This document shows, one piece after another, positions 7,101 to 42,158 of a DNA stretch of 50,918 nt. Every line of letters starts with the position of its first letter. Positions within the stretch are counted from its first letter, which is position 1. The translations under genes were made by a program, and so were the position numbers. The stretch lies in sequence record NC_029020.1; one strand, given 5' to 3'. The notes below the pieces were generated by a model, which worked only from the letters and a program-made list of their open reading frames with translations, searched no databases and had not been told where the DNA came from.

Positions 7101-10100
7101 GAAGGTCTCGCCAACTTCATCAACACGGCAATAAACGACCTAATGAACGACATTAACAACTTCATTTATTCGCACTTAGGTCAGAACGTTTTCACTGAAG
7201 TCCTAGCGGGGATCGTCGACGGTGCCATACTCGTACTGATCTCACTCATTCCTATCTTTGGGAAGGTCTTTGACTATTTGTCGTTTATATCCTTTATCGG
7301 TAGTACGGTATTTGATCTGCTAGCTGGCCCAGCGTCGTTCAACGAGACCGTTAACTCGTTCAAGGAGATGTTGACGAGCCCAACGTCATTAGCAATGATA
7401 GGGACGCTTTTGGTCGGCGGGATTGCTACGGGATTGATAAAACCGAGCAACATAGAAAGCGTTGGCCTAGCCAAGACTGTGGACAGTGTTAAATCGGCTC
7501 TGTCGAAGATTGAGGATTCAATAAAGGACAGGGTCGACATAACAACGATAAGCGATAAGGTCATCGGTACTATCAAGAGCGATGTAGCTAAGTCTTCAGA
7601 CTTCTCGAAAGTTAACCATTTGGTGAAAGAGATAGACCCCGAGAAGCTGGACACTAACGCACTGAAAAATAAGGGTTTAGGCAACACGATAGTGAAGATC
7701 GAAGGCGATGCATACAAATTCATTCAAATTGATACATCCAATTCAAAGATCACAATAGAGACTTACTACGTGTTCAAAAACGTGAGACTGAAAGTGGTTA
7801 AGGGAGTCGACAAGGTTGAAGTAAGGCTTAGAAAAGATTTCACTGGTAAGATAAAAGTAGGCGTCAAGCCAAAGCTTACTGATCAATTAATTGCGACGCT
7901 TAAAAACGGAATTGAAGGTAAAATGCTCCACGTCATAGTAAATATCAAGAATACTGTAAAGAATTTACTTTCCTCAAACAAGTTACCCGAGGCTCTAGAG
8001 ACCATCAAGCTTAACCTGGCGTCGATTGTCGCTAGACAGCTGTTTAAAGACCTCCAAAAGGCGAACGGCAATGCGGTGAAGATATCCCCGTACGAGAAAA
8101 TAGCCTATATCGACGGTAAGTTCTGGGACTTTGTATACAACGAGAACGGCACTCTCAAGGAGANGAATAAGATAAATGACCTAGAGGCGTTAGCTAAGCT
8201 GACGGAGTTCGCGGAGAAGGAGGTAGGCAACTTCGTTACAATGAACAAAAACTTGATAGAACAGTTGCTGGAGAGTAATAAAAACCTGAAGAGCATTGAG
8301 TATTATTTGACAAATAAGCTTACGGGCAACGTCGTAAGGAATGAGTATGTGGAGCTTGAAGACCTGTTAGGAAAGAAGCTGAAGTTCACGTCTGAGACCG
8401 AGATAAACACCGGCGAAATAAAAACGACCAAGACAATTAAAGGAAATTTCCCGCGTGAATTATTACAAAGCATTACTCAACAAGAGAAAAGTATTCTGAC
8501 GCCACAAGAAGTNGCNGACNTACTCAGTTACGATAACAGGNTCTCACGGATATTCAGGCCACTAATTGACGAGCATCCCGAGGTCAAGGAGTTACTAGAG
8601 AAATTAGCGTCGAAAGGGAAACTGACCAACGATATCAATCAGCTGGAAGAAATAGCCAGCAAAATAAAGTCGTTTTACAAGGCTCTGGACAGCGAAGTGG
8701 AAGACATAATGAAAGTCATAAATGATAATCTTAGCAATAAACCACAACTCAACAAGCTGTTCTACGGCGTAGATCTCTCGAAGGTCGTTAATAAGATTGC
8801 TGATAAGATTGCGGAAAAGCAAATACTGAACGACCCCGATGCTGTACTGAACGGCGAAAGCGGAGTACCTAAAATCTCTCTATCGGACGTCCTAAAACAC
8901 TTTAGCATGTCGAACAAGGCTAAGGTTGTCTTAAACTACCTGGAGGCAGATTCCAAGGTATATAACGAGGTAATGGGGAAGCTGAAGAATTTCTCTCCCG
9001 AGGCCAGGGATTATATTCTGGCAGAGGTATTCGACCATCAGTTCGTCGTAGCGATTACTGATGCTATAAAGGAGAATAAGGATATATCGATAACTCCCGA
9101 AGGGCTTGAAAACGTAGTCCAAGATATAGACGATGTTATAGAAACTATCAAAATTGAAGGCCCTCAAGGGTCGCAGGTACCTGTCTCAACGAGCTCAACA
9201 AGCACCACCTCTAGCGGTACCGCTTCGACAAGTTCTACGGAGGGTGCGGTTTCCAGCACCGCTTCGAATGCCAGTTCGAACGGCACCGCTACAGTCCTAC
9301 AGCCTCCAGCACAGCAGTCAGTACAGCAAGGGGCTCAAGCACCGATATCGCAGATCGCAACGCTCAAAAACGCGTTGCCAGCAACGTTCCCGAAATTCAA
9401 CGAACTGCCGTCGGGTGCGAAATTCTTATTCATGGATATTGTCGAAAGACTGTTAGAAGAAAAGGGAGAACTATCACCGGAAGAACTACAGGAGGCGTTA
9501 GAGGACGCAAAGGCGAAGTACCAAGCACAGTTTCAGGCGATACTTGACAGCCTAAAGAAGATGGTCAACGACGTGAAAGCCGAAGCGACGTCTAGTAGTG
9601 AAGAGGAAGCCGTACTGAACAGCCTAGATAAGGGCATAGGCGAGCTGGAGAAGAAAGTAGGGTTCGATCTGCGGAGGCTCTCGTACTTCCTGTCCATCGC
9701 GAGCTTCGTAGCGGACAGGTACAACGTAGCTACGGCGATCGAACTCTTAGACCAGCTGAACTCGCTCACCCCGCAACAGCTACAGAACGTGATTGTCCTT
9801 ACCCAGCCACAGATAGATACGTTAACCAAAATCTCTCCGCTCCTTAAGGAGCTGATCGTAAAGCTTAACAAGGGAGTGAAGACGAAGGACGTGCTGGATA
9901 TAGCAACGGTAATTAAGGAAGCCCTGGAGAAGATGGGAATTAACCTGGACGTCGAGCAGTTAATTAGGGTGATCAACGCGTTACAGACCCTGACTCAGCA
10001 GTTCAATTTNNAAATCAGTGATATAGCGACCCTGATAGCTGTAAGCGACCTCAACGGTCTACTGGCCATTCCCGTTCCTATANTATCCAACCTCAAGTCG

Positions 10101-10377
10101 CTGACTCACGCCCCAGCTCGGANNCAGCACGATAAACGAAAATGTCCTTTCGGTCGGTACCGAAGAAATTACAGAAACGACGCTGTCATTAGGAACTATC
10201 CCGCTACAAGGAGCGACATTAGAACAGTTACAGCAATTGTTGCAACCGCCACTGGTTACACCGCCTAACGCTACGGTTGAAGGAAATCAAGGAGGAGGAG
10301 GCATCAATATACCTCCGTCGTATTCGACTCCGCAGTTCGCGTCGTATAGTTCGAAGCAACAGTACCTGATAATCTAA
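4133..10377 (+). CDS. Giant (~2080 aa) Q-rich TPR-like helical-repeat protein with central TM segments (ATV p1940-like); two apparent frameshifts
   Basis: ORFs 4133..5737 and 5778..10268 join at ~5735. After ~10122 the reading continues in another frame (STINENVL...YSSKQQYLII*) to TAA 10375-10377. Repeats of the type xGNYQQALQIAQQY; hydrophobic stretch at ~7190-7440. Confidence 0.75.
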
Positions 10378-34434: not shown

Positions 34435-35093
34435 TTGTGGCCAGTTACCTTTGCAATGATCGCAGGGTCTGTACCACTCTTTGAGAGAAAGCTGATTAGT
34501 GCATATCGTAGTGAGTGGGTAGTACATTTCAAGTATTTTTTAGCGAACATCCTTATCCTAGCTTTTAAATCGTAGTCGGAAATCGTTAATACGAATCTGT
34601 ACGATTGTTTATTTCTTATGATACTCGGGATGATGAAGAACTTCATATTGCCTTTTTTCTCTGCCTGGAGCTGGAACTCCCTCTGCCCCGACTCCACGAA
34701 CGTCTTGAAAGCCCTGATTGCTTCGCCTATTCTTGAACCGTTAACCAGCTGTATGAGGAGGATCGCGACGTAAGCCTCGTAGGGCATCAGGTTTAGGTCG
34801 TATAACTGTTTGTAGGCTTCCGTGAGAACTTTCTTGGCCTCGAGGAAATCGACTGAATCATCCCAGGTGTGTTCTATCCTCCTCTTTCCCACTGGCTTTA
34901 AAACTTTCTTGAGTATCTCGCTTTCTTCCCTCTTTCTTTCCTTTTCTTCCTTCGGCTTCAGCCCTAGCTTTACGGCAATCATATCAATAATGTCAGTCCA
35001 GTTCTTCTCCCTGGCTTCCTGTAAATACTCTAAAAGTTTAGGGGAGTTATCGGGAAGATTCAAGATAATTTGTTTAAGCTCCTCTTTATCCAT
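34362..35093 (-). CDS. int: Tyrosine recombinase / integrase
   Basis: Catalytic residues: GSRIGEA (R), HSLR (H-x-x-R), TGH (H), IIQYT (Y). Confidence 0.93.
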   Translation of the reverse strand: MDKEELKQIILNLPDNSPKLLEYLQEAREKNWTDIIDMIAVKLGLKPKEEKERKREESEILKKVLKPVGKRRIEHTWDDSVDFLEAKKVLTEAYKQLYDLNLMPYEAYVAILLIQLVNGSRIGEAIRAFKTFVESGQREFQLQAEKKGNMKFFIIPSIIRNKQSYRFVLTISDYDLKARIRMFAKKYLKCTTHSLRYALISFLSKSGTDPAIIAKVTGHKKLDRIIQYTQLKDAVEIQRKLAS

Positions 35094-35212
35094 TTCTCTT
35101 CAACCTCCAAAATTGAATTTTGCTCCTATCAGATTGCCTTATCTCTCCTGGGGTTGACATTTCTCTTTTTCCCGTTATATCCTCAGAAAGAGAAATATAA
35201 AAACTTCACGGC

Positions 35213-35238
35213 GTTTCTCTTAGACCCGTAAGAGAAAC
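35213..35238. terminator. Perfect 10-bp stem-loop downstream of 35248..35541
   Basis: GTTTCTCTTA-GACCCG-TAAGAGAAAC. Confidence 0.5.
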
Positions 35239-35247
35239 AAAATTAGG

Positions 35248-35541
35248 TCAATTGGCTTTTCTACTTCCCATTGCTTTCTCTGCAAATTTTTCGGCTATAT
35301 TCACAATCAACATAACAAGAACCATTAGAAAGGAATCTATAATCAATTGAACCTCTAGGAAAATGCCGACTGAATTTAATCGAATTGAATTAGATATTAC
35401 TTTAGTGTAGATGTTGTTTATATATATCAAATTGACGATTTCTATTATAAAAATTAATACAGCCGAACCCCGCATGATAAGGAGGTTTCTCTTACTTCTT
35501 TTATCTTCTTGATCCGAAAGAGGATTAGGGGATTGAGACAT
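35248..35541 (-). CDS. Small two-TM membrane protein under the conserved promoter cassette
   Basis: 97 aa, two hydrophobic helices. Confidence 0.65.
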   Translation of the reverse strand: MSQSPNPLSDQEDKRSKRNLLIMRGSAVLIFIIEIVNLIYINNIYTKVISNSIRLNSVGIFLEVQLIIDSFLMVLVMLIVNIAEKFAEKAMGSRKAN

Positions 35542-35569
35542 TTTACTCGAGATATCTCTTTGATGAACT

Positions 35570-35622
35570 GATATTTAAGCTTTCTGCCTGACTGGTAAGG
35601 TAGAAAAAAGGCTATTGGCTTT
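35570..35622 (-). promoter_or_regulatory. Conserved promoter cassette A (palindromic operator plus BRE/TATA)
   Basis: Minus strand ...CCTTACCAGTCAGGCAGAAAGCTTAAATATC; 53 bp identical to 36897-36949. Confidence 0.85.
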
Positions 35623-35631
35623 TACCATCAC

Positions 35632-36423
35632 TTAGAATGTTAATGTGCTACACAATGGGCATTTGTAAGTCCTCCCGAAACGTTTCAAGTATTCCTCAGG
35701 ATCCTTTTGAATATCTCGGAAGTATATCCTTTGGTGGTTGTAAAATAACCCCGACCCTCCTTTCCTCAGCTTAGCCTCAGCCTCTACGAACTTTTGGAAG
35801 AACTCTGGGTTCTTTAACGCTAGCACTGCAAAATCTGCTGGTGTCTTGTAAGCAGAGCACCAACAATCGTAAGCTTTTCCGTAAATGTCATAAAGTGGGT
35901 TCTTCTTCAGACCGTTAACCTTTATGTACTCCTCTACATCTTTTTCTGAAAATTCGAAAATAGGAGCATACGTATAAACTTGGAATTTGGGGTGTAAATA
36001 AAATTTCACGGCACGGCTTTTCATCCAACTCTCGTCCTTTCTTACTCCCGTGATAAGGACTATTTCCTCTTTATCCTTGCCCTTCAAGAAGTCTTGTAGA
36101 GGCTCTAGTTTGAGGTAATGTTTACACCACCTCTTTGTCAGTGTAGGGAAACCTATCTTGTTCACCAACTCAAAATAGTTGTATTTGGGCCCTATAATGG
36201 TAAGCTCAATGCCCAACTCTTTAGTCACTTCTTTTACGTAATCCAATAACCCTGGTGTTGCGATACCCGTGTTAATGAATAATGCCTTTGTCTTTTCAGG
36301 ATAAATGGAGTGCGTCAAGTGTAGTGTCACCAATGAGTCTTTGCCACCGCTGAACATGACATAGATTTCTTTAAACCCGAGTAGGATCTTCTTAGCCTCT
36401 TCCTTAACTGCTAGCAGATCCAT
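35632..36423 (-). CDS. PAPS reductase / DndC-like adenine-nucleotide alpha-hydrolase family protein
   Basis: PP-loop FSGGKDS, WCKHYLKLEP, ITGVRKDES, YDCWC, C-terminal CPLC. Confidence 0.88.
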   Translation of the reverse strand: MDLLAVKEEAKKILLGFKEIYVMFSGGKDSLVTLHLTHSIYPEKTKALFINTGIATPGLLDYVKEVTKELGIELTIIGPKYNYFELVNKIGFPTLTKRWCKHYLKLEPLQDFLKGKDKEEIVLITGVRKDESWMKSRAVKFYLHPKFQVYTYAPIFEFSEKDVEEYIKVNGLKKNPLYDIYGKAYDCWCSAYKTPADFAVLALKNPEFFQKFVEAEAKLRKGGSGLFYNHQRIYFRDIQKDPEEYLKRFGRTYKCPLCSTLTF

Positions 36424-36865
36424 GACCTCCCCCTCCCCTTCCCCAATGGAGCGGATGCATCGGGTTGGTTGCGATTGATATACTATCGAGATATATCATG
36501 ATATCGTCGTACTGAGTCATATGGTACTTCAGATATATCACAATATTTTTGTAAAAGTGCCAATATTCTTCATAGATCTTCAACGCAATATATTTTCTAG
36601 ATCTCGCTATTAGCCTTTCTGCTCCATCAAAATAGAAGAATCCTAAATCATCTTCCAGTAGTTGCAAAAACTTCCTAAACTCGTCCTCAGAAAGAGGCAT
36701 ATATCTGTCGAAATCGAAATAGGTATAGATCCTTCCGTCCTCTATCTCTGGGCCCCTTATTTCGAATTTTATGCCTCTTGCCTTCAAAAATTCCTTAATG
36801 GATTCGGTTACATTTTCCCAATCATCCCTTATTTCCTTAGGGATTTCGATCTGAATTTCCGCCAT
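36404..36865 (-). CDS. Acidic small protein, candidate AcrID1-family anti-CRISPR (paralog 1)
   Basis: FDFDRYMPLSEDEFRKF and EYWHFYKNIVIYLKY..DDIMIYL resemble remembered AcrID1 FFDPEVEISKQEFEDL / EWWEFENQYLEFELDY..DEKIFV; paralogous to 38626..39015. Confidence 0.55.
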   Translation of the reverse strand: MAEIQIEIPKEIRDDWENVTESIKEFLKARGIKFEIRGPEIEDGRIYTYFDFDRYMPLSEDEFRKFLQLLEDDLGFFYFDGAERLIARSRKYIALKIYEEYWHFYKNIVIYLKYHMTQYDDIMIYLDSISIATNPMHPLHWGRGGGGHGSASS

Positions 36866-36877
36866 TTGATCCCGCGA

Positions 36878-36949
36878 GATATCTTCTGCCGAAATAGATA
36901 TTTAAGCTTTCTGCCTGACTGGTAAGGTAGAAAAAAGGCTATTGGCTTT
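36878..36949 (-). promoter_or_regulatory. Conserved promoter cassette B
   Basis: GATATCTTCTGCCGAAATAGATATTTAAGCTTTCTGCCTGACTGGTAAGGTAGAAAAAAG; nearly identical to C, and its 53-bp right part is identical to A. Confidence 0.85.
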
Positions 36950-37349
36950 GGGTTTCTCCTTCATCATCGACAAACAGCTGGTTGTTAAGACCCATCCCAT
37001 CGCCTTCCTTCGGCCTGAACACGATCTGCATATTTTCGGGAACTAAGTACGGGTCGAGATCTACGACGGGCTTGGCCAGCTCGCTTGGGATTGATATGTA
37101 ATACTGCGTAAAGACCTTTCCGTTCTTTTTTTCTCGTTTAATCAACCATCTTAATCGGATTCTTAGACCTTTTTTGGCATATCTTCGGTTGGGTTTGAAT
37201 TCTATTATATTATTTTTAATATTGAAATACGGCACATAATTGATTAGGAACACCGCTGACCTGCTGGTGACGTTTATGTATCTTAACATATACTCTTTCC
37301 CATTTTTCCTGTTTATCTTTACCCTCCACCTCAGCTTGACTTCGACCAT
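36939..37349 (-). CDS. Basic protein with two tandem AbrB/SpoVT-like swapped-hairpin repeats; candidate regulator
   Basis: VKLRWRVKINRKNGKEYMLRYINV / IRLRWLIKREKKNGKVFTQYYISIP. Confidence 0.55.
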   Translation of the reverse strand: MVEVKLRWRVKINRKNGKEYMLRYINVTSRSAVFLINYVPYFNIKNNIIEFKPNRRYAKKGLRIRLRWLIKREKKNGKVFTQYYISIPSELAKPVVDLDPYLVPENMQIVFRPKEGDGMGLNNQLFVDDEGETQSQ

Positions 37350-37380
37350 GCTTTCCTATTATTGTATTGATATGAAACCC

Positions 37381-37410
37381 TATAAATATACCTTACCTGT
37401 CAGGCAGAAA
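37381..37410 (-). promoter_or_regulatory. Promoter cassette E with the operator inverted relative to A/B/C
   Basis: Minus strand TTTCTGCCTGACAGGTAAGG directly followed by TATATTTATA, 31 nt upstream of ATG 37349. Confidence 0.75.
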
Positions 37411-37522
37411 GAAGGGGAAAGAAAAAATATTGAACTGACGTAACAGTTTGATTGCAGAGGGGTTAACACCCAACAAACAAAGTGCCACGTCAAAAAGCGT
37501 GGCGAGGTAAAAATCGTAAACT

Positions 37523-38041
37523 TTACCGCACCGGATTTAGGCAGATAGGATATTCATATTCCTTTTCGTACTCCTCGTAAGCCTCGTCTTCGTTTCCAGG
37601 GTTTTTCATCTCCTCTATTAACTTATTGATGAAATCCCTGCTGAAAGTGTTTATGACAAGCAGAGCCCTTCGTTCATTACAAATTACGTTCCCGTTCTCT
37701 ATCTTTTCAATCCTATCGCAGAAGTCGAATATCATGTATTCACTTGATAACGATGCCAATTTCTCTCTAGGAATTTTCAGATCTATAGGAAAATATGAAC
37801 CGTCGTTGTCTATCACCAGGCTACAAAACACGACACATTTGTTACCTTTCCTGTCCTTGTATAAGTGCAGAGACGCAAGGATTAGAGGAAATGCCGAATG
37901 AGGGATATCCCCGAAATATACCACTACTGGCTTGTTTTCCGAATTTAACGCGAAAATGGCGACCCTCTTTCCGAGATTATTTACGACAATCTTTAACTCG
38001 TTGGGGTCGACACCTCCTAATTTTATCCCTACTTCCGCCAT
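37523..38041 (-). CDS. Hypothetical protein, 172 aa, under cassette C; candidate anti-defence gene
   Basis: ORF track; acidic C-terminus; begins MAE like the cassette B gene. Confidence 0.7.
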   Translation of the reverse strand: MAEVGIKLGGVDPNELKIVVNNLGKRVAIFALNSENKPVVVYFGDIPHSAFPLILASLHLYKDRKGNKCVVFCSLVIDNDGSYFPIDLKIPREKLASLSSEYMIFDFCDRIEKIENGNVICNERRALLVINTFSRDFINKLIEEMKNPGNEDEAYEEYEKEYEYPICLNPVR

Positions 38042-38055
38042 TTATGTCCCCGCAA

Positions 38056-38114
38056 GATATCTTCTGCCGAAATAGATATTTAAACTTTCTGCCTGACTAG
38101 TAAGGTAGAAAAAG
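38056..38114 (-). promoter_or_regulatory. Conserved promoter cassette C
   Basis: GATATCTTCTGCCGAAATAGATATTTAAACTTTCTGCCTGACTAGTAAGGTAGAAAAAG. Confidence 0.85.
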
Positions 38115-38186
38115 CCTTAGACCCTAACGGCCCTTAGGCGGGCATCTCTTATTTATAAACCGAATCGGGACAAGTAGATAATTGTA

Positions 38187-38492
38187 ATGGGAATCTTAGA
38201 AGAAGTCCAAAACGCCTTGGCGTACTATCAAAAAACAGCAGTTAGCGAAAAAGATTCCCTGTACCTCCACAACATCTACTCGCAGTTGTACTACATTTTA
38301 ACCGTAGAAAACAGACCGCTTGGTGCCGATGAGTTCGACAGCCTGTTGAAAGCCTTAGGGGTAAACGACACAACGCTACTGGTGCAGGAATACCAGTCCT
38401 TAACCGATGAACAGAAGAAGCAGATCCTCATGCAGATCCTGCAAATGATAGAAAGCGTGATGAGGAATATACATACAATGGTAAACTACTAA
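38187..38492 (+). CDS. Hypothetical helical protein, 101 aa
   Basis: ORF track; TATA TTTATAAA at ~38152. Confidence 0.65.
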   Translation: MGILEEVQNALAYYQKTAVSEKDSLYLHNIYSQLYYILTVENRPLGADEFDSLLKALGVNDTTLLVQEYQSLTDEQKKQILMQILQMIESVMRNIHTMVNY

Positions 38493-38625
38493 TTCCCTCC
38501 TTAAGAATTAAGAATTTTTTCGTTTTCCCTTCTAGTCTTGCGTCTGCTCCCCGCCGGGCTTCCCCGATATACAGCTGTTTAAAGCTTAAATTATAAAGGC
38601 CGGCAAGATGTTACCTCGATAGCAA

Positions 38626-39015
38626 ATGAACGGAAACGAGATAGTAGAAGAAATTTTAGAATTCCTAAATAAAAAAGGTGCTAAGTTCGATATAGATCAG
38701 TTCGAAACCGAAAACAAAACGCTCAAACTTGAAGTAGAATTCCCGAAACCTATAATTCTAACTGAAACGGAATACGATATGCTGTATGATCTTCTGAAGA
38801 GCTTAGGGTTCTATCCTGTAAACGGGGCCGAAAACAAGATAAACGAATATGTAGGGTATAAAAATTATACAGGAATAGAAGAATTCGAAAACGATGCAGG
38901 AGACAAAATATGGTTAGAATACAACAAGGTTTCGGTGGGAGGAGAGACTACTTATTTTGTTAAAAATGTAGAAGTCGAGCTCAATACGGAAGAATTCATG
39001 AACCTGCTTTTCTAA
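38626..39015 (+). CDS. Acidic small protein, candidate AcrID1-family anti-CRISPR (paralog 2)
   Basis: IVEEILEFLNKKGAKFDI..LTETEY..LL..LGF...GAENKI aligns with 36404..36865; contains EEFEN; promoter AAAGCTTAAATT at 38581. Confidence 0.55.
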   Translation: MNGNEIVEEILEFLNKKGAKFDIDQFETENKTLKLEVEFPKPIILTETEYDMLYDLLKSLGFYPVNGAENKINEYVGYKNYTGIEEFENDAGDKIWLEYNKVSVGGETTYFVKNVEVELNTEEFMNLLF

Positions 39016-39272
39016 ACCCTGAAAGCATCATTTTATTTTTTATCTTTAATAAGAAAGCCAGTTTTTCAGCTATAGAGTTCTTGAAAAGTCGCGGTTCAGT
39101 CTGCTAAACATACGGTTGAGGCGAAATCATGGCAAGCCTAACGAGGTTACGGTAAGTTACGCGTCTTAGAACGTCTGGGAATCAACCCCTTAGTCGAAAT
39201 AGAAAAAAGAATAATATATTTAAAAAGAAAAAATTGGCTTCAAAAAGAGAATACGAGACGGCACGTGCTTTT

Positions 39273-40196
39273 CTACGTGATTATTTTGATGCTGAAAATG
39301 CGTGAAGATGGATTAAATAATAAAATTCGTAACCTTTCATGCTTCAGCTTTTTGACGAATCTCTGATTGTTGACCTTGTAATCAACAACGAAGCGTTTGA
39401 GCCCGGTTATGTAATCCGGCAACGTTTTATATAACTTGACCGCCTCCTCCCTTTTACCGTCCTTCAGAAGTAACAGTACAACGGCTACCTTGACCAATAT
39501 CGGGTTGTACAGCTTTAGCAATTTATCAAGGAGATTAACATACCCGTATTTGCTCAGGAGCTCGTACGTATACTGCCTTAGCTTTCGCATTTTCGTCTTT
39601 AGTAAACCCTGCATTTCTTCCTTCGTTAAGCCGAGCTTCTCTTTCAGGACGTAACTTAATTCGAACATGGCATCGGATAGTTTCTGTTTTATTGTGTCCT
39701 CATCATCAGTTGAGAAATTACCGATTAGCTGAATGATGCGGTCTGGCTCGACGTCGCAATACTGAATAGCAAAAGCACCCAATATGTAGAGCTTGTTTGG
39801 AATTTTCCTGCGGAGCATCTTTTGTGCTATTCGCCTGAAGAGGGCTTTCTGTGCAGAGTCCGAAATTAACAAAGAAACCCTATATGCAAAGGAATAATAT
39901 TTCAGTCTCGTGTCGTATTCTACAGGGATCGTGCTGATTCCACCGTACGGTAAAAATGTATTTGCGGGACGATAATGGGTATAAATTTTATATACTATGT
40001 TGAACCTGCTTGACGAATCGTCTATTCCTTCTAAATTGCTGGCGAAGTACTTCTCGTAGTCGTAGCCGATTACTTCTCCGTTGTCCGCACAGACGAGATA
40101 TATGCCGTGAGTCACGATTTGTTTACACTGAACACTTTCAGACTGGTCAAAAAACATTTGGCCGAAAGTTTGAGTTTGAACGACTGCTTCTGTCAT
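39273..40196 (-). CDS. Hypothetical protein, 307 aa
   Basis: Long ORF. Confidence 0.7.
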   Translation of the reverse strand: MTEAVVQTQTFGQMFFDQSESVQCKQIVTHGIYLVCADNGEVIGYDYEKYFASNLEGIDDSSSRFNIVYKIYTHYRPANTFLPYGGISTIPVEYDTRLKYYSFAYRVSLLISDSAQKALFRRIAQKMLRRKIPNKLYILGAFAIQYCDVEPDRIIQLIGNFSTDDEDTIKQKLSDAMFELSYVLKEKLGLTKEEMQGLLKTKMRKLRQYTYELLSKYGYVNLLDKLLKLYNPILVKVAVVLLLLKDGKREEAVKLYKTLPDYITGLKRFVVDYKVNNQRFVKKLKHERLRILLFNPSSRIFSIKIIT

Positions 40197-40330
40197 ACCG
40201 AGTCAATTATGGCCGGGGACTGTTTAAAAAGTAATACTGTAGTGAAATGCATAATACCGTAGAATGGGTCTAATCAGAAAAAATTGAATTTGTTGTTAAA
40301 TTATAAATTACAAACTCGTCAGCGTAATTA

Positions 40331-40552
40331 TCACTTTTCTGCTTTCAACAATATCTCGTAAGGGCTTGGAACGTTGTAAATTAAAGATTTAAGATTTTCT
40401 AGTATTTTCGATATTCCATCATATACGCTGTCATACTTAGGATTNTCTTCGCTGAGATAAAAGTAATCTTTTTCTAAATCCTTAAAATACCTTAAAATCT
40501 CTTCCAAAGACCTTTTGTACTGTTCATAATGTTTGTCTGCATTGTCCAGCAA
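40331..40552 (-). CDS. Small helical hypothetical protein (probably the 3' part of a gene starting ~40668, disrupted by Ns or a frameshift)
   Basis: ORF track; upstream promoter at ~40700 and ATG at ~40668. Confidence 0.45.
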   Translation of the reverse strand: MLDNADKHYEQYKRSLEEILRYFKDLEKDYFYLSEXNPKYDSVYDGISKILENLKSLIYNVPSPYEILLKAEK

Positions 40553-40745
40553 TGTAAGTAACTTAAGTTAGCTCTTTCTCCTTTAATAATGTAAGAACGC
40601 TCTTACCTTCAGTGGTCGAATTTTGNTTANNGTTTTCTGTACTTTGTTCGTCCCAGAACTCCTGAGCCATACTTATCCCATGCTGATTCTCTCAAACGGC
40701 TGTATAAAAGCTTTATGTCGGAAAGCATATAATGGATCGGTGTTT

Positions 40746-41003
40746 TCATTCCTCTGGGATTATTTCCTTGATGTAAGCCTTATGGATGTATGTGGTTCTA
40801 TTTGACATGTCTACAAATTCTATGAAGTATTTTTGATTGTCGTTTATCTTACCCTCTATCGTGGAACCGTCGTGAAAAACTATTCTGCATGCCTTCCCTA
40901 CCCACTTCTTCCCGAAATCGCCGAACTCCTTAACGCCGTTTTTCTGCTCCTGCTTCATNTTCATNTTTTGCTTCAAGCTTTTCACCCCGATGCCCGAATT
41001 CAA
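40746..41003 (-). CDS. Sm/Lsm/Hfq-like fold protein
   Basis: WVGKACRIVFHDGSTIEGKINDNQKYFIEF...TTYIHKAYIKEIIP matches the Sm1 (V.I.L.NG..L.G.I) and Hfq Sm2 (MVYKHAISTVVP) patterns. Confidence 0.65.
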   Translation of the reverse strand: MNSGIGVKSLKQXMXMKQEQKNGVKEFGDFGKKWVGKACRIVFHDGSTIEGKINDNQKYFIEFVDMSNRTTYIHKAYIKEIIPEE

Positions 41004-41170
41004 ATTTAGCNGATTAGGTTTTTAAAGNANGNNGNCTGGTGCTTTCCTATNTGCCTCAAACGGCTGTTTGAGCCTGCCTCAGGCTATAAGCCCGTAATCC
41101 GTATGATTCTGACGGGCGAAAATATTAAAAACCGGGATGTGCTAAAATATACGAAAAGGAGGCCAGAAAA

Positions 41171-41737
41171 ATGCAGGCTAAACCAAGTTACATAGACCCG
41201 ACCTCAATAAATAAGCTTTTCGGTCAAGCTCCTTTCAGGTCTGAAAAGGTCGCCAAGATATTTGAGNTNCTNAGCCTGGGCAGACCGATGTTAGCGAGGG
41301 ATCTGGCAGAGGCAATTAACGTCCCTTCGAAGCAGATCCTGCCGAGGCTGAAGAGGTACATCCAGAGGGGATGGGTCGCCGTCCAGAAGGTAAACAACAT
41401 CAACATCTATTCCCTCACCGAGACGGCCAGGAANATATTGAAGCTACAGGGCAGTTTCGANAAGGTAAGGGAGAAGGCCGAGAAGGTCTTAGGGAGGAAG
41501 CTGGAAAGCGACGAGCTGGAGATCCTGAAGTTCTTCTATAAGGAGCAGAGGTACATAGAGAACTCTCCGAATGAGACGATTGCAGAGCAGGTGTGGCACT
41601 CCGTCGGGATGAAGATCCCCTTGTCAAGGGTACAGGAAATACTAACCGAGTTCACGCTGAGAGGGATCCTGTTCGCCTTCAGGCTGAAGAACGGGCAGAT
41701 CTTGAAGGTGAGGCTGAACAGNAACCTCCTTCTCTAG
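41171..41737 (+). CDS. Tandem winged-helix DNA-binding protein
   Basis: ARDLAEAINVPSKQILPRLKRYIQRGWV...YSLT plus a second wHTH-like half (LSRVQEILTEFTLRGIL). Confidence 0.75.
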   Translation: MQAKPSYIDPTSINKLFGQAPFRSEKVAKIFEXXSLGRPMLARDLAEAINVPSKQILPRLKRYIQRGWVAVQKVNNINIYSLTETARXILKLQGSFXKVREKAEKVLGRKLESDELEILKFFYKEQRYIENSPNETIAEQVWHSVGMKIPLSRVQEILTEFTLRGILFAFRLKNGQILKVRLNXNLLL

Positions 41738-42158
41738 CTAAAGAAGGGCTAATGGACGCCTAATTCTATACACCATTTTTCTCAATTTAGTAATAAAAAT
41801 TCTAAGCAACGTACCTTCCCGCCGTAAATTGTAAAAGCCTGCTTTACGGCGAAAGTAATTATTTGTATAAAGCCCGCGNTCTANCGGCGTAAATNCAAAA
41901 TNCNCTAAAAGGAGATATATTATAATTACTACTACCCCGCTTTTNGCGACCGCTANGCGTGCNGGCCGGCGTTCTTTTGGTGCCGTTGGTTTTACGCGTT
42001 TTTACGGAGACTAGCTTACACTGTTGTTAGACTAATTGAGTTTTTNCTTTTACAGCNGGAGAAATTATTTGGTAGGGTAATGCGTAGTGTGAGCGGGCTT
42101 TACTACCTGCTTATACTAATTGCCTGTATGCTCGCTATATTCCGGTCAGACCTCACAA

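What the first reader, a model, noticed from the sequence alone, without database searches (positions are those of the whole stretch)
36404..39015. Two divergent paralogs resembling anti-CRISPR AcrID1
36404..36865 and 38626..39015 align with each other by eye: (V/I).E.I.EFL...G.KF.I, then L(S/T)E.E(F/Y)...LL..LGF...GAE..I. Their C-terminal ~95 aa follow the pattern I remember for rudiviral AcrID1, an acidic Cas10d-binding dimer. Both have an extra ~35-40-aa N-terminal segment and a strong promoter, but from different motif families. The extension could alter target range beyond type I-D (inference).
Basis: partly seen in the sequence, partly recalled or inferred. Interest (0 to 1): 0.8.

Follow-up and report, generated by a model that had tools for sequence, protein, structure and literature searches.

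The report
Distant AcrID1-like paralogs in SMV2
Two small acidic proteins of the archaeal spindle virus SMV2 are old paralogs that look like distant, enlarged relatives of the anti-CRISPR protein AcrID1, which would extend that superfamily to a new virus group, although what they inhibit is untested.

Summary
The window is the complete genome of Sulfolobus monocaudavirus SMV2. The two ORFs are annotated genes: gp39 (36404-36865, minus strand, 153 aa) and gp43 (38626-39015, plus strand, 129 aa). They are real paralogs (BLASTP E 3e-9, same PHROG, model-to-model TM 0.83/0.71).

With about 40 relatives from hot-spring metagenomes they form a family restricted to SMV/ATSV-like viruses.

No curated AcrID1 model (Pfam PF07118, NCBIfam NF033952) and no pairwise BLAST detects them. 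Two methods that reach further do point to AcrID1:
- Profile-profile comparison with 14 rudiviral AcrID1 paralogs gives 92-93% probability (P 3-6e-7) over almost all of AcrID1, well above shuffled controls.
- Foldseek ranks AcrID1-family structures first in the PDB for both AlphaFold models (6EXP for gp39, 2H36 for gp43), with modest scores. They also fill ranks 3-4 in BFVD, directly after the two SMV2 proteins.

The N-terminal helices align, and most of the extra length is two internal insertions.

gp39 carries SMV2's published anti-defence promoter motif and overlaps a PAPS-reductase-like gene. gp43 has only a core promoter.

My reading is distant AcrID1-superfamily members that probably bind a host defence protein. 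The target is unknown, and type I-D is unproven.

The parts
36404..36865 (-). SMV2 gp39 (YP_009219254), 153 aa, acidic alpha/beta protein of the gp39 clade. Listed as predicted anti-defence gene ADG.63 in PMC11065993.
   Evidence: ORF and annotation. AlphaFold2 model has pLDDT 82.6 and pTM 0.74, with order H-E-E-H-E-E-E-E and a disordered tail at 137-153. Its top PDB Foldseek hit is 6exp_B, AcrID1. ADG.63 listing.
38626..39015 (+). SMV2 gp43 (YP_009219258), 129 aa, pI 4.27, paralog of gp39 in the gp43 clade.
   Evidence: ORF, paralogy and PHROG. AlphaFold2 model has pLDDT 91.5 and pTM 0.82. hhalign to the AcrID1 family gives 92-93% probability. Its top PDB Foldseek hit is 2h36, SIFV ORF14, an AcrID1-family member.
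36866..36944 (-). gp39 upstream regulatory region. It holds BRE/TATA AAAGCTTAAAT at 36900-36910, a 40-nt block at 36878-36917 shared with the gp41 promoter, and the inverted repeat ATATCT/AGATAT with an 11-nt spacer.
   Evidence: The motif is described for SMV2 anti-defence genes in PMC11065993.
38568..38625 (+). gp43 upstream region. It has the core BRE/TATA (AAAGCTTAAATTATAAA, 38581-38597) about 35-45 nt before the ATG, and lacks the flanking anti-defence motif and operator repeats.
   Evidence: gp43 is absent from the paper's anti-defence gene list.
35632..36423 (-). gp38, a PAPS-reductase-like protein. Its start overlaps the end of gp39 by 20 nt, so the two are probably co-transcribed from the gp39 promoter.
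   Evidence: Pfam PF01507, E 5.5e-27. Coordinates. The same gene pair occurs in L006, L028 and L029.
38056..38095 (-). gp41 promoter block, a near-identical twin of the gp39 promoter. Context only: it shows gp39 belongs to a co-regulated gene set.
   Evidence: (one mismatch in 40 nt).

Best explanation
gp39 and gp43 are two anciently diverged paralogs of a small acidic alpha/beta protein family (phrog_24726; ADG.63 of Bhoobalan-Chitty et al. 2024). The family is confined to SMV/ATSV-like spindle viruses of Sulfolobales and to hot-spring metagenomes.

The family is a distant, enlarged branch of the AcrID1/DUF1374 superfamily. It has the same helix-strand-helix-sheet order along the sequence, with two additions: an extra strand after helix 1, and a conserved LGF(Y)xxNGAEN insertion after helix 2.

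By analogy with AcrID1, which is a dimer that sequesters Cas10d, these proteins most likely act without catalysis, by binding and blocking a host defence protein soon after infection. gp39 is driven by the SMV2 early/anti-defence regulatory motif and is co-transcribed with the PAPS-reductase-like gp38. gp43 has its own unregulated core promoter.

Shown here: the paralogy, the extent of the family, the remote profile and fold similarity, the promoter architecture and the acidity. Inferred: the binding-inhibitor function. Unknown: the target. Type I-D Cas10d is only one candidate.
For: Paralogy:
- BLASTP, PHROG and model-to-model match.
- A tree places the two proteins in separate supported clades (97/93 and 98/95), so the duplication is old.

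Family:
- 42 cluster representatives at E<=1e-3 among 1.84 billion proteins.
- 25 metagenome loci, including SMV-like contigs of 35-50 kb.
- Members in ATSV and SMV3.

AcrID1 link:
- hhalign of family against AcrID1 family gives probability 93.1% (P 3.2e-7) and 92.2% (P 6e-7), covering AcrID1 residues 2-96.
- Controls: reversed alignment scores 10; 100 column shuffles reach at most 16.7; 100 block shuffles reach at most 28.5; the real score is 43.1.
- The signal lies in both halves of the protein, and each clade alone aligns in a consistent register.
- An HMM of the 14 AcrID1 paralogs directly hits three gp43-clade metagenome ORFs, E 3e-4 to 7e-3 in a set of 574 ORFs.
- Foldseek against the PDB: rank 1 for gp39 is 6exp_B, AcrID1 (E 4.8e-3, probability 0.99). 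Rank 1 for gp43 is 2h36, SIFV0014 (E 2e-3, probability 1.00). 2h36 is itself an AcrID1-family member.
- Foldseek against BFVD: after the two SMV2 proteins, rank 3 is a putative AcrID1 of SBFV3 and rank 4 is the 119-aa SIRV2 ORF119, a length-inferred member of my AcrID1 set. Ranks 5, 6 and 13 are small SIRV1/SIRV3 proteins whose family membership I did not check (E 1.7e-4 to 9e-3).

Anti-defence context:
- gp39 is listed as a predicted anti-defence gene on promoter grounds.
- The gp39 promoter block is shared with gp37, gp41, gp51 and gp52.
- Most family members elsewhere are single genes behind a strong BRE/TATA.
- Two copies per genome occur in SMV2 and in L030, and members sit at three different positions in SMV-like genomes. 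This resembles AcrID1 paralogs in rudiviruses.
- Both proteins are acidic like AcrID1.
- A SIRV2 fragment, gp45-47, that includes two AcrID1-family paralogs is needed to resist type I-A targeting (PMC11065993). The superfamily is therefore not tied to type I-D.
Against: - No member of the family reaches Pfam PF07118 or NCBIfam NF033952 even at E<=10, while the positive controls do.
- Pairwise BLAST to AcrID1 is not significant.
- A family profile searched against PDB sequences lists 2h36 only at E 1.2.
- Foldseek E-values are marginal (2e-3 to 5e-3) and TM-scores low (0.31-0.36 by query, 0.41-0.44 by target). Unrelated alpha+beta folds such as SciW/EagT6, DcrB and hot-dog thioesterases have similar E-values.
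- The family's best conserved motif, LGF..NGAEN, has no counterpart in AcrID1.
- The gp39 clade alone reaches only 66% probability, and only over the N-terminal half.
- No functional data exist, and gp43 lacks the anti-defence promoter motif.
Confidence: 0.6

Rival explanations
1. The family shares only a common alpha+beta sheet architecture and acidic composition with AcrID1, by convergence or chance. It would then be an unrelated small viral accessory protein whose role cannot be inferred from AcrID1.
For: TM-scores stay below 0.5, and Foldseek E-values of 2e-3 to 5e-3 are matched by unrelated folds. The curated family HMMs and BLAST find nothing. One 8-column block shuffle reached 52.7% probability over 24 columns.
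Against: Two methods (profile-profile comparison and 3Di structure search), two separate AlphaFold models and two structure libraries all pick the same small family from Sulfolobales viruses as the best hit other than the SMV2 proteins themselves. The real hhalign score of 43.1 over 87 columns is far above every control. The AcrID1 HMM gives direct weak hits to three family members.
Confidence: 0.2
2. gp39-clade proteins are functional partners of the viral PAPS-reductase-like enzyme (gp38), for example a substrate-recruiting or regulatory subunit of a nucleic-acid modification activity, and do not inhibit host proteins directly.
For: gp39 overlaps gp38 by 20 nt. The same gp39-like then PAPS-reductase order recurs in L006 (overlapping genes), L028 and L029, although the gp39-like proteins there are only 42-51% identical to gp39.
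Against: The pair is missing in L019, which has a PAPS reductase 90% identical to gp38 but carries its family member between the gp46-like and gp47-like genes. It is also missing in L024, L025 and L030 and in all gp43-clade genes, and in ATSV the two genes lie about 8 kb apart. The contigs that keep the pair are close SMV relatives (PAPS reductase 74-75% identical), so inherited gene order could explain it.
Confidence: 0.12
3. The proteins are chaperone or adaptor-like binders of another viral protein, as the DUF1795 proteins EagT6 and SciW are, and do not target host defence.
For: Foldseek lists SciW, EagT6 and DcrB with probability 0.89-0.98 and TM 0.30-0.37 for the gp39 model.
Against: These hits are absent from the top 50 for the better gp43 model, apart from 3lyd. 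There is no sequence-profile support and no conserved partner gene.
Confidence: 0.05

Closest known systems
AcrID1 (SIRV3 gp02 / SIRV2 gp03; Pfam DUF1374 PF07118, NCBIfam NF033952; PDB 6EXP, 6THH)
   Same: Both are small acidic alpha/beta proteins of Sulfolobales viruses. The secondary-structure elements align in the same order from the N-terminal helix onward. AcrID1 is the best PDB fold match for gp39. Both families occur as several diverged copies per genome in variable regions, as single genes behind strong early promoters.
   Different: The SMV2 proteins are 33-57 aa longer, mainly through two internal insertions, one of which carries the family's signature LGFxxNGAEN. They are not detected by the curated family HMMs. 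They come from spindle-shaped SMV/ATSV-like viruses, whereas AcrID1 comes from rod-shaped and filamentous viruses. Dimer formation, Cas10d binding and type I-D inhibition are untested.
SIFV ORF14 (SIFV0014, PDB 2H36) and AFV1 ORF99 (PDB 3DJW/3DF6)
   Same: 2H36 is the rank-1 PDB hit for the gp43 model (E 2e-3, probability 1.00, TM 0.36/0.41). ORF99 also appears (probability 0.93-0.98) for both models. 2H36 is linked to AcrID1 by sequence.
   Different: These are structural-genomics proteins with no known function, about 95-112 aa long, and they lack the two insertions.
ADG.63 of Bhoobalan-Chitty et al. 2024 (PMC11065993)
   Same: This is the same family. gp39 and a Thermofilum MAG protein are listed as predicted anti-defence genes because of their regulatory motif. 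The family table gives four homologs, two of them with the motif.
   Different: ADG.63 is not mentioned in the paper's main text, and its supplement rows, as far as read, carry no link to AcrID1. The paper says most of its predicted genes have no detectable similarity to known Acrs. gp43 is not listed as a predicted anti-defence gene.

Membership tests
AcrID1 family (Pfam PF07118 DUF1374 / NCBIfam NF033952) | The protein matches the curated family HMM above its cut-off. | tested here: not met
   gp39, gp43 and all 43 family members give no PF07118 hit at E<=10 and no NF033952 hit at E<=10. The controls score 111-115 bits on NF033952 (SIRV3 gp02, SIRV2 gp45) and 48-103 bits on PF07118 (these two and SIRV2 ORF119b).
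AcrID1 superfamily (remote homology) | Profile-profile similarity over most of the domain, and above controls. | tested here: met
   hhalign gives probability 92-93%, P 3-6e-7, over 87-91 columns covering AcrID1 residues 2-96. Shuffled controls reach a score of at most 28.5 against 43.1 for the real alignment. The gp43 clade alone gives 90%; the gp39 clade alone gives 66%, over the N-terminal half only.
AcrID1 superfamily (remote homology) | The fold matches solved AcrID1-family structures (6EXP, 2H36). | tested here: inconclusive
   These structures are the rank-1 PDB hits for both models and dominate the BFVD hits. However, E-values are 2e-3 to 5e-3 and TM only 0.31-0.36 by query and 0.41-0.44 by target. 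I had no coordinates to check topology element by element.
AcrID1 (functional anti-CRISPR) | The protein is a small acidic protein. | tested here: met
   gp43 has pI 4.27 and net charge -15. gp39 has pI 5.12 and net -8. The family median pI is 4.70, against 4.37 for AcrID1.
AcrID1 (functional anti-CRISPR) | The protein forms a homodimer that binds Cas10d and sequesters it in a 4:2 complex (PMC7689449). | not testable with these tools
   No multimer prediction or binding assay was available. The paper's text does not list the AcrID1 contact residues, so their conservation could not be scored.
AcrID1 (functional anti-CRISPR) | The protein inhibits type I-D CRISPR interference in vivo. | not testable with these tools
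   This needs infection or plasmid interference assays in S. islandicus.
Archaeal viral anti-defence genes as defined in PMC11065993 | The gene is preceded by the virus-specific consensus regulatory sequence around a strong BRE/TATA promoter. | tested here: met
   This is met for gp39: its 40-nt block differs at one base from the gp41 promoter and is shared with gp37, gp51 and gp52, and gp39 is listed in the paper's Supplementary Data. It is not met for gp43, which has the core AAAGCTTAAAT only.

The most novel reading that the evidence does not exclude
The family is a previously unrecognised, structurally expanded branch of the AcrID1 superfamily in spindle-shaped viruses. Its members would inhibit something other than type I-D Cas10d, such as type I-A or III-B CRISPR or a non-CRISPR defence, through a new interface built by the conserved LGFxxNGAEN insertion. 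gp39 would additionally form an early anti-defence operon with a PAPS-reductase-like modification enzyme.
Probability: 0.3. Interest if true: 0.65.

Novelty: new variant of a known kind. Interest (0 to 1): 0.5.

Why it matters
Only a handful of archaeal anti-CRISPRs are known. By curated family models and published counts, the AcrID1 family sits almost entirely in rod-shaped and filamentous viruses.

A supported remote link to a family in SMV/ATSV-like spindle viruses does three things:
- It gives a functional lead for an otherwise uncharacterised predicted anti-defence family (ADG.63).
- It suggests the AcrID1 fold is a widely reused scaffold for binding host defence proteins.
- It offers two diverged paralogs in one genome, with different regulation, as a natural test of how target range diversifies.

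The gain is a testable hypothesis. No function has been demonstrated.

Tried and rejected
- Word-indexed homolog searches were nearly empty: 5 proteins for gp43 and only itself for gp39. The exhaustive profile search was needed.
- phmmer of gp39 and gp43 against PDB sequences, and a family profile against PDB sequences, gave nothing significant. 2h36 appeared only at E 1.2.
- Pfam, NCBIfam and PHROG annotation gave no named function.
IMG/VR returned only SMV2 itself.
- The look-up of encoding contigs for P0013 and P0015 gave only contigs of about 1 kb.
Residues 36-129 align only to the later two-thirds of AcrID1, and residues 1-60 independently align to its N-terminal 40-odd residues, so the extension model was rejected.
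- The AcrIIIB2 paper was checked for an SMV link. AcrIIIB2 is SIRV3 gp40 and is unrelated.
- I looked for AcrID1 residues that contact Cas10d in order to score their conservation. The text does not list them.
Full report
**Identity of the window.** The window is 100% identical over the 7.5 kb queried (34500-42000) to KP238129/NC_029020 and has that record's length. That record is the complete circular 50,918-bp genome of Sulfolobus monocaudavirus SMV2, an archaeal spindle-shaped virus classified under Bicaudaviridae. The two ORFs in the finding are annotated hypothetical proteins. gp39 lies at 36404-36865 on the minus strand and is 153 aa. gp43 lies at 38626-39015 on the plus strand and is 129 aa. 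They are transcribed divergently and are separated by gp40, gp41 and gp42.

**Checking the observation.** The two proteins are paralogs.
- BLASTP gives 34% identity over 80 residues, E 3e-9.
- Both hit phrog_24726.
- The AlphaFold2 model of gp43 matches the BFVD model of gp39 with TM 0.83/0.71.

Both proteins are acidic: gp43 has pI 4.27 and net charge -15, gp39 has pI 5.12 and net -8, and AcrID1 has pI 4.37 and net -13.

**The family.** Word-indexed searches found almost nothing. A profile search of 1.84 billion cluster representatives found 42 proteins at E<=1e-3. One metagenome scan returned 25 loci. Several of these come from 35-50 kb contigs, and L019 (43.5 kb) shares many genes with SMV2. 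Members also occur in Acidianus tailed spindle virus and in SMV3, but were not detectable in SMV1 or SMV4.

A maximum-likelihood tree puts gp43 and gp39 in two separate, well-supported clades (97/93 and 98/95). The duplication is therefore old and did not arise recently within SMV2. Contig L030 also carries two copies. In SMV-like genomes, family members occupy three different positions:
- upstream of the PAPS-reductase-like gene;
- between the gp42-like and gp44-like genes;
- between the gp46-like and gp47-like genes.

This is the behaviour of a mobile accessory gene.

**Testing the AcrID1 idea by sequence.** I took the AcrID1 sequence from the tools (SIRV3 gp02). I then collected 12 paralogs from SIRV2 and SIRV3 by iterative HMM search and added two database relatives.

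The ordinary tests are negative:
- BLASTP of AcrID1 against gp39 or gp43 is not significant.
- Neither Pfam PF07118 (DUF1374) nor NCBIfam NF033952 (AcrID1_fam) hits gp39 or gp43 at E<=10, and none of the 43 family members hits PF07118. AcrID1 and its paralogs score 48-115 bits on these models as positive controls.
- A family profile searched against PDB sequences lists SIFV0014 only at E 1.2.

The proteins are therefore not members of the curated AcrID1 family.

**Profile-profile comparison.** hhalign of the 43-sequence family against the 14-sequence AcrID1 alignment gives 93.1% probability (P 3.2e-7, 87 columns). The built-in tool gives 92.2% (P 6e-7, 91 columns). The alignment runs from gp43 residue 2 to 123 and from AcrID1 residue 2 to 96.

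| Comparison | hhalign score |
|---|---|
| Real alignment | 43.1 |
| AcrID1 alignment reversed | 10 |
| 100 column shuffles | mean 9.9, max 16.7 |
| 100 eight-column block shuffles | mean 15.2, max 28.5 |

The signal lies in both halves of the protein: residues 1-60 give 83% and residues 36-129 give 90%. The gp43 clade alone gives 90%. The gp39 clade alone gives 66%, over the N-terminal half only, in the same register. An HMM of the AcrID1 paralogs also hits three gp43-clade metagenome ORFs directly, at E 3e-4 to 7e-3 in a set of 574 ORFs.

**Structure comparison.** The AlphaFold2 model of gp39 has pLDDT 82.6 and pTM 0.74. The model of gp43 has pLDDT 91.5 and pTM 0.82. Both show helix, two strands, helix, then a four-stranded meander.

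Foldseek against 350,542 PDB chains gives these top hits:

| Model | Rank-1 hit | E-value | Probability | TM (query/target) |
|---|---|---|---|---|
| gp39 | 6exp_B, SIRV3 AcrID1 | 4.8e-3 | 0.99 | 0.31/0.43 |
| gp43 | 2h36, SIFV ORF14 | 2e-3 | 1.00 | 0.36/0.41 |

2h36 is itself related to AcrID1 by sequence. 6EXP chains also appear for gp43 at probability 0.92-0.93.

Against BFVD, ranks 1 and 2 are gp43 itself and gp39. Rank 3 is a putative AcrID1 of Sulfolobales Beppu filamentous virus 3 (E 1.7e-4). Rank 4 is a 119-aa SIRV2 protein that, by length, is ORF119, a member of my AcrID1 set. Ranks 5, 6 and 13 are small SIRV1 and SIRV3 proteins whose AcrID1-family membership I did not check. Rank 7 is a protein of SSV6.

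The scores are modest, and unrelated alpha+beta folds have similar E-values. On its own this evidence is inconclusive. What carries weight is that two methods, two models and two libraries agree on one small family.

There is no 35-40 aa N-terminal extension. The N-terminal helix of gp43 aligns with the N-terminal helix of AcrID1. The extra length lies in two places:
- an insertion of about 13 residues after helix 1, which forms an additional strand;
- an insertion of about 12 residues after helix 2, which carries the family's best conserved motif, LGF(Y)xxNGAEN.

Only gp39 has a true N-terminal extension, about 13 residues relative to gp43, together with a disordered glycine-rich tail.

**Regulation and context.** Upstream of gp39 lies a 40-nt block containing the BRE/TATA core AAAGCTTAAAT. 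This block differs at one base from the gp41 promoter, and most of it is shared with the promoters of gp37, gp51 and gp52. It also contains the inverted repeat ATATCT/AGATAT.

This is the SMV2-specific anti-defence motif described by Bhoobalan-Chitty et al. 2024 (PMC11065993). That paper lists gp39 as predicted anti-defence gene ADG.63, and gp37 as an anti-defence-associated protein (ADa) that it reads as a leucine-zipper repressor. gp43 has the same core promoter but none of the flanking conserved sequence, and it is not on the paper's list.

Most family members in metagenomes are also single genes behind a strong BRE/TATA about 35-45 nt upstream of the start codon.

gp39 overlaps the start of the PAPS-reductase-like gp38 by 20 nt. 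The same gene pair recurs in L006, L028 and L029, but not in L019, L024, L025 or L030.

**Interpretation.** The best-supported reading is that the family is a distant, enlarged branch of the AcrID1/DUF1374 superfamily. By analogy with AcrID1, a dimer that sequesters the type I-D large subunit Cas10d (PMC7689449), gp39 and gp43 probably act as stoichiometric binders of a host defence protein. gp39 would be expressed early.

The target cannot be inferred. The family's signature insertion is absent from AcrID1. Within rudiviruses, AcrID1 paralogs are thought to have diversified, and a SIRV2 fragment (gp45-47) that includes two AcrID1-family paralogs is needed for resistance to type I-A (PMC11065993).

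I put about 0.8 on remote homology, about 0.5 on an anti-defence function and at most 0.2 on type I-D specifically.

The rivals are fold convergence (0.2), a partnership of the gp39 clade with the PAPS-reductase-like enzyme (0.12) and a chaperone-like role (0.05).

**Novelty.** gp39 had already been predicted as an anti-defence gene from its promoter. Its family was treated as separate from AcrID1, and I found no paper linking the two. The remote link to AcrID1 and the inclusion of gp43 appear to be new. They remain computational and of moderate strength. I rate this as a new variant of a known kind and of moderate interest.

Noticed in passing
window 35632-36865; L006 12-996; L028 178-1423; L029 3174-4419: A gp39-clade gene sits immediately upstream of, or overlaps, a PAPS-reductase-like gene (PF01507) in four contigs. 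In SMV2 and L028 an integrase follows on the opposite strand. This could be a conserved operon or simply inherited gene order among close SMV relatives.
   Followed up: partly
window 36878-36917 and 38056-38095 (minus strand): The gp39 and gp41 promoters are identical over 40 nt apart from one base. Both carry the inverted repeat ATATCT/AGATAT with an 11-nt spacer downstream of the TATA box. An imperfect palindrome, TTTCTGCCTGACTAGT/ACTAGTAAGGTAGAAA, lies upstream of the gp41 BRE, and a slightly weaker version reads by eye upstream of gp39.
   Followed up: partly
window 35248-35541 (minus strand, gp37): PMC11065993 reads gp37 as a leucine-zipper repressor of the anti-defence genes. Its sequence is strongly hydrophobic (for example AVLIFIIEIVNLIYI and FLMVLVMLIVNIA) and could equally contain membrane helices.
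   Followed up: no
L021 9932-10373: On a 50-kb metagenome contig the family member is split into two overlapping ORFs, 9932-10228 and 10209-10373. This is an apparent frameshift or sequencing error.
   Followed up: no
P0036 (246 aa, metagenome protein): In this relative the domain occupies residues 22-133 and is followed by about 110 extra C-terminal residues. It is the only fusion seen among the 42 representatives.
   Followed up: no
P0008: NCBI names this protein 'AcrID1 family anti-CRISPR protein, partial [Planomonospora alba]'. It is 73% identical to SIRV3 AcrID1 and lies on a 31,951-bp contig, about the size of a rudivirus genome. It is probably contamination of an actinobacterial assembly by a Sulfolobus rudivirus.
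   Followed up: no
L005 2069-2374 (SIRV3 gp03) and L004 32496-32807 (SIRV2 gp51): My iterative HMM search recruits these annotated 'hypothetical proteins' into the AcrID1 family (E 1e-26 to 1e-28). SIRV3 gp03 does not hit Pfam PF07118 at E<=0.01. The superfamily therefore already extends beyond the curated model within rudiviruses.
   Followed up: partly
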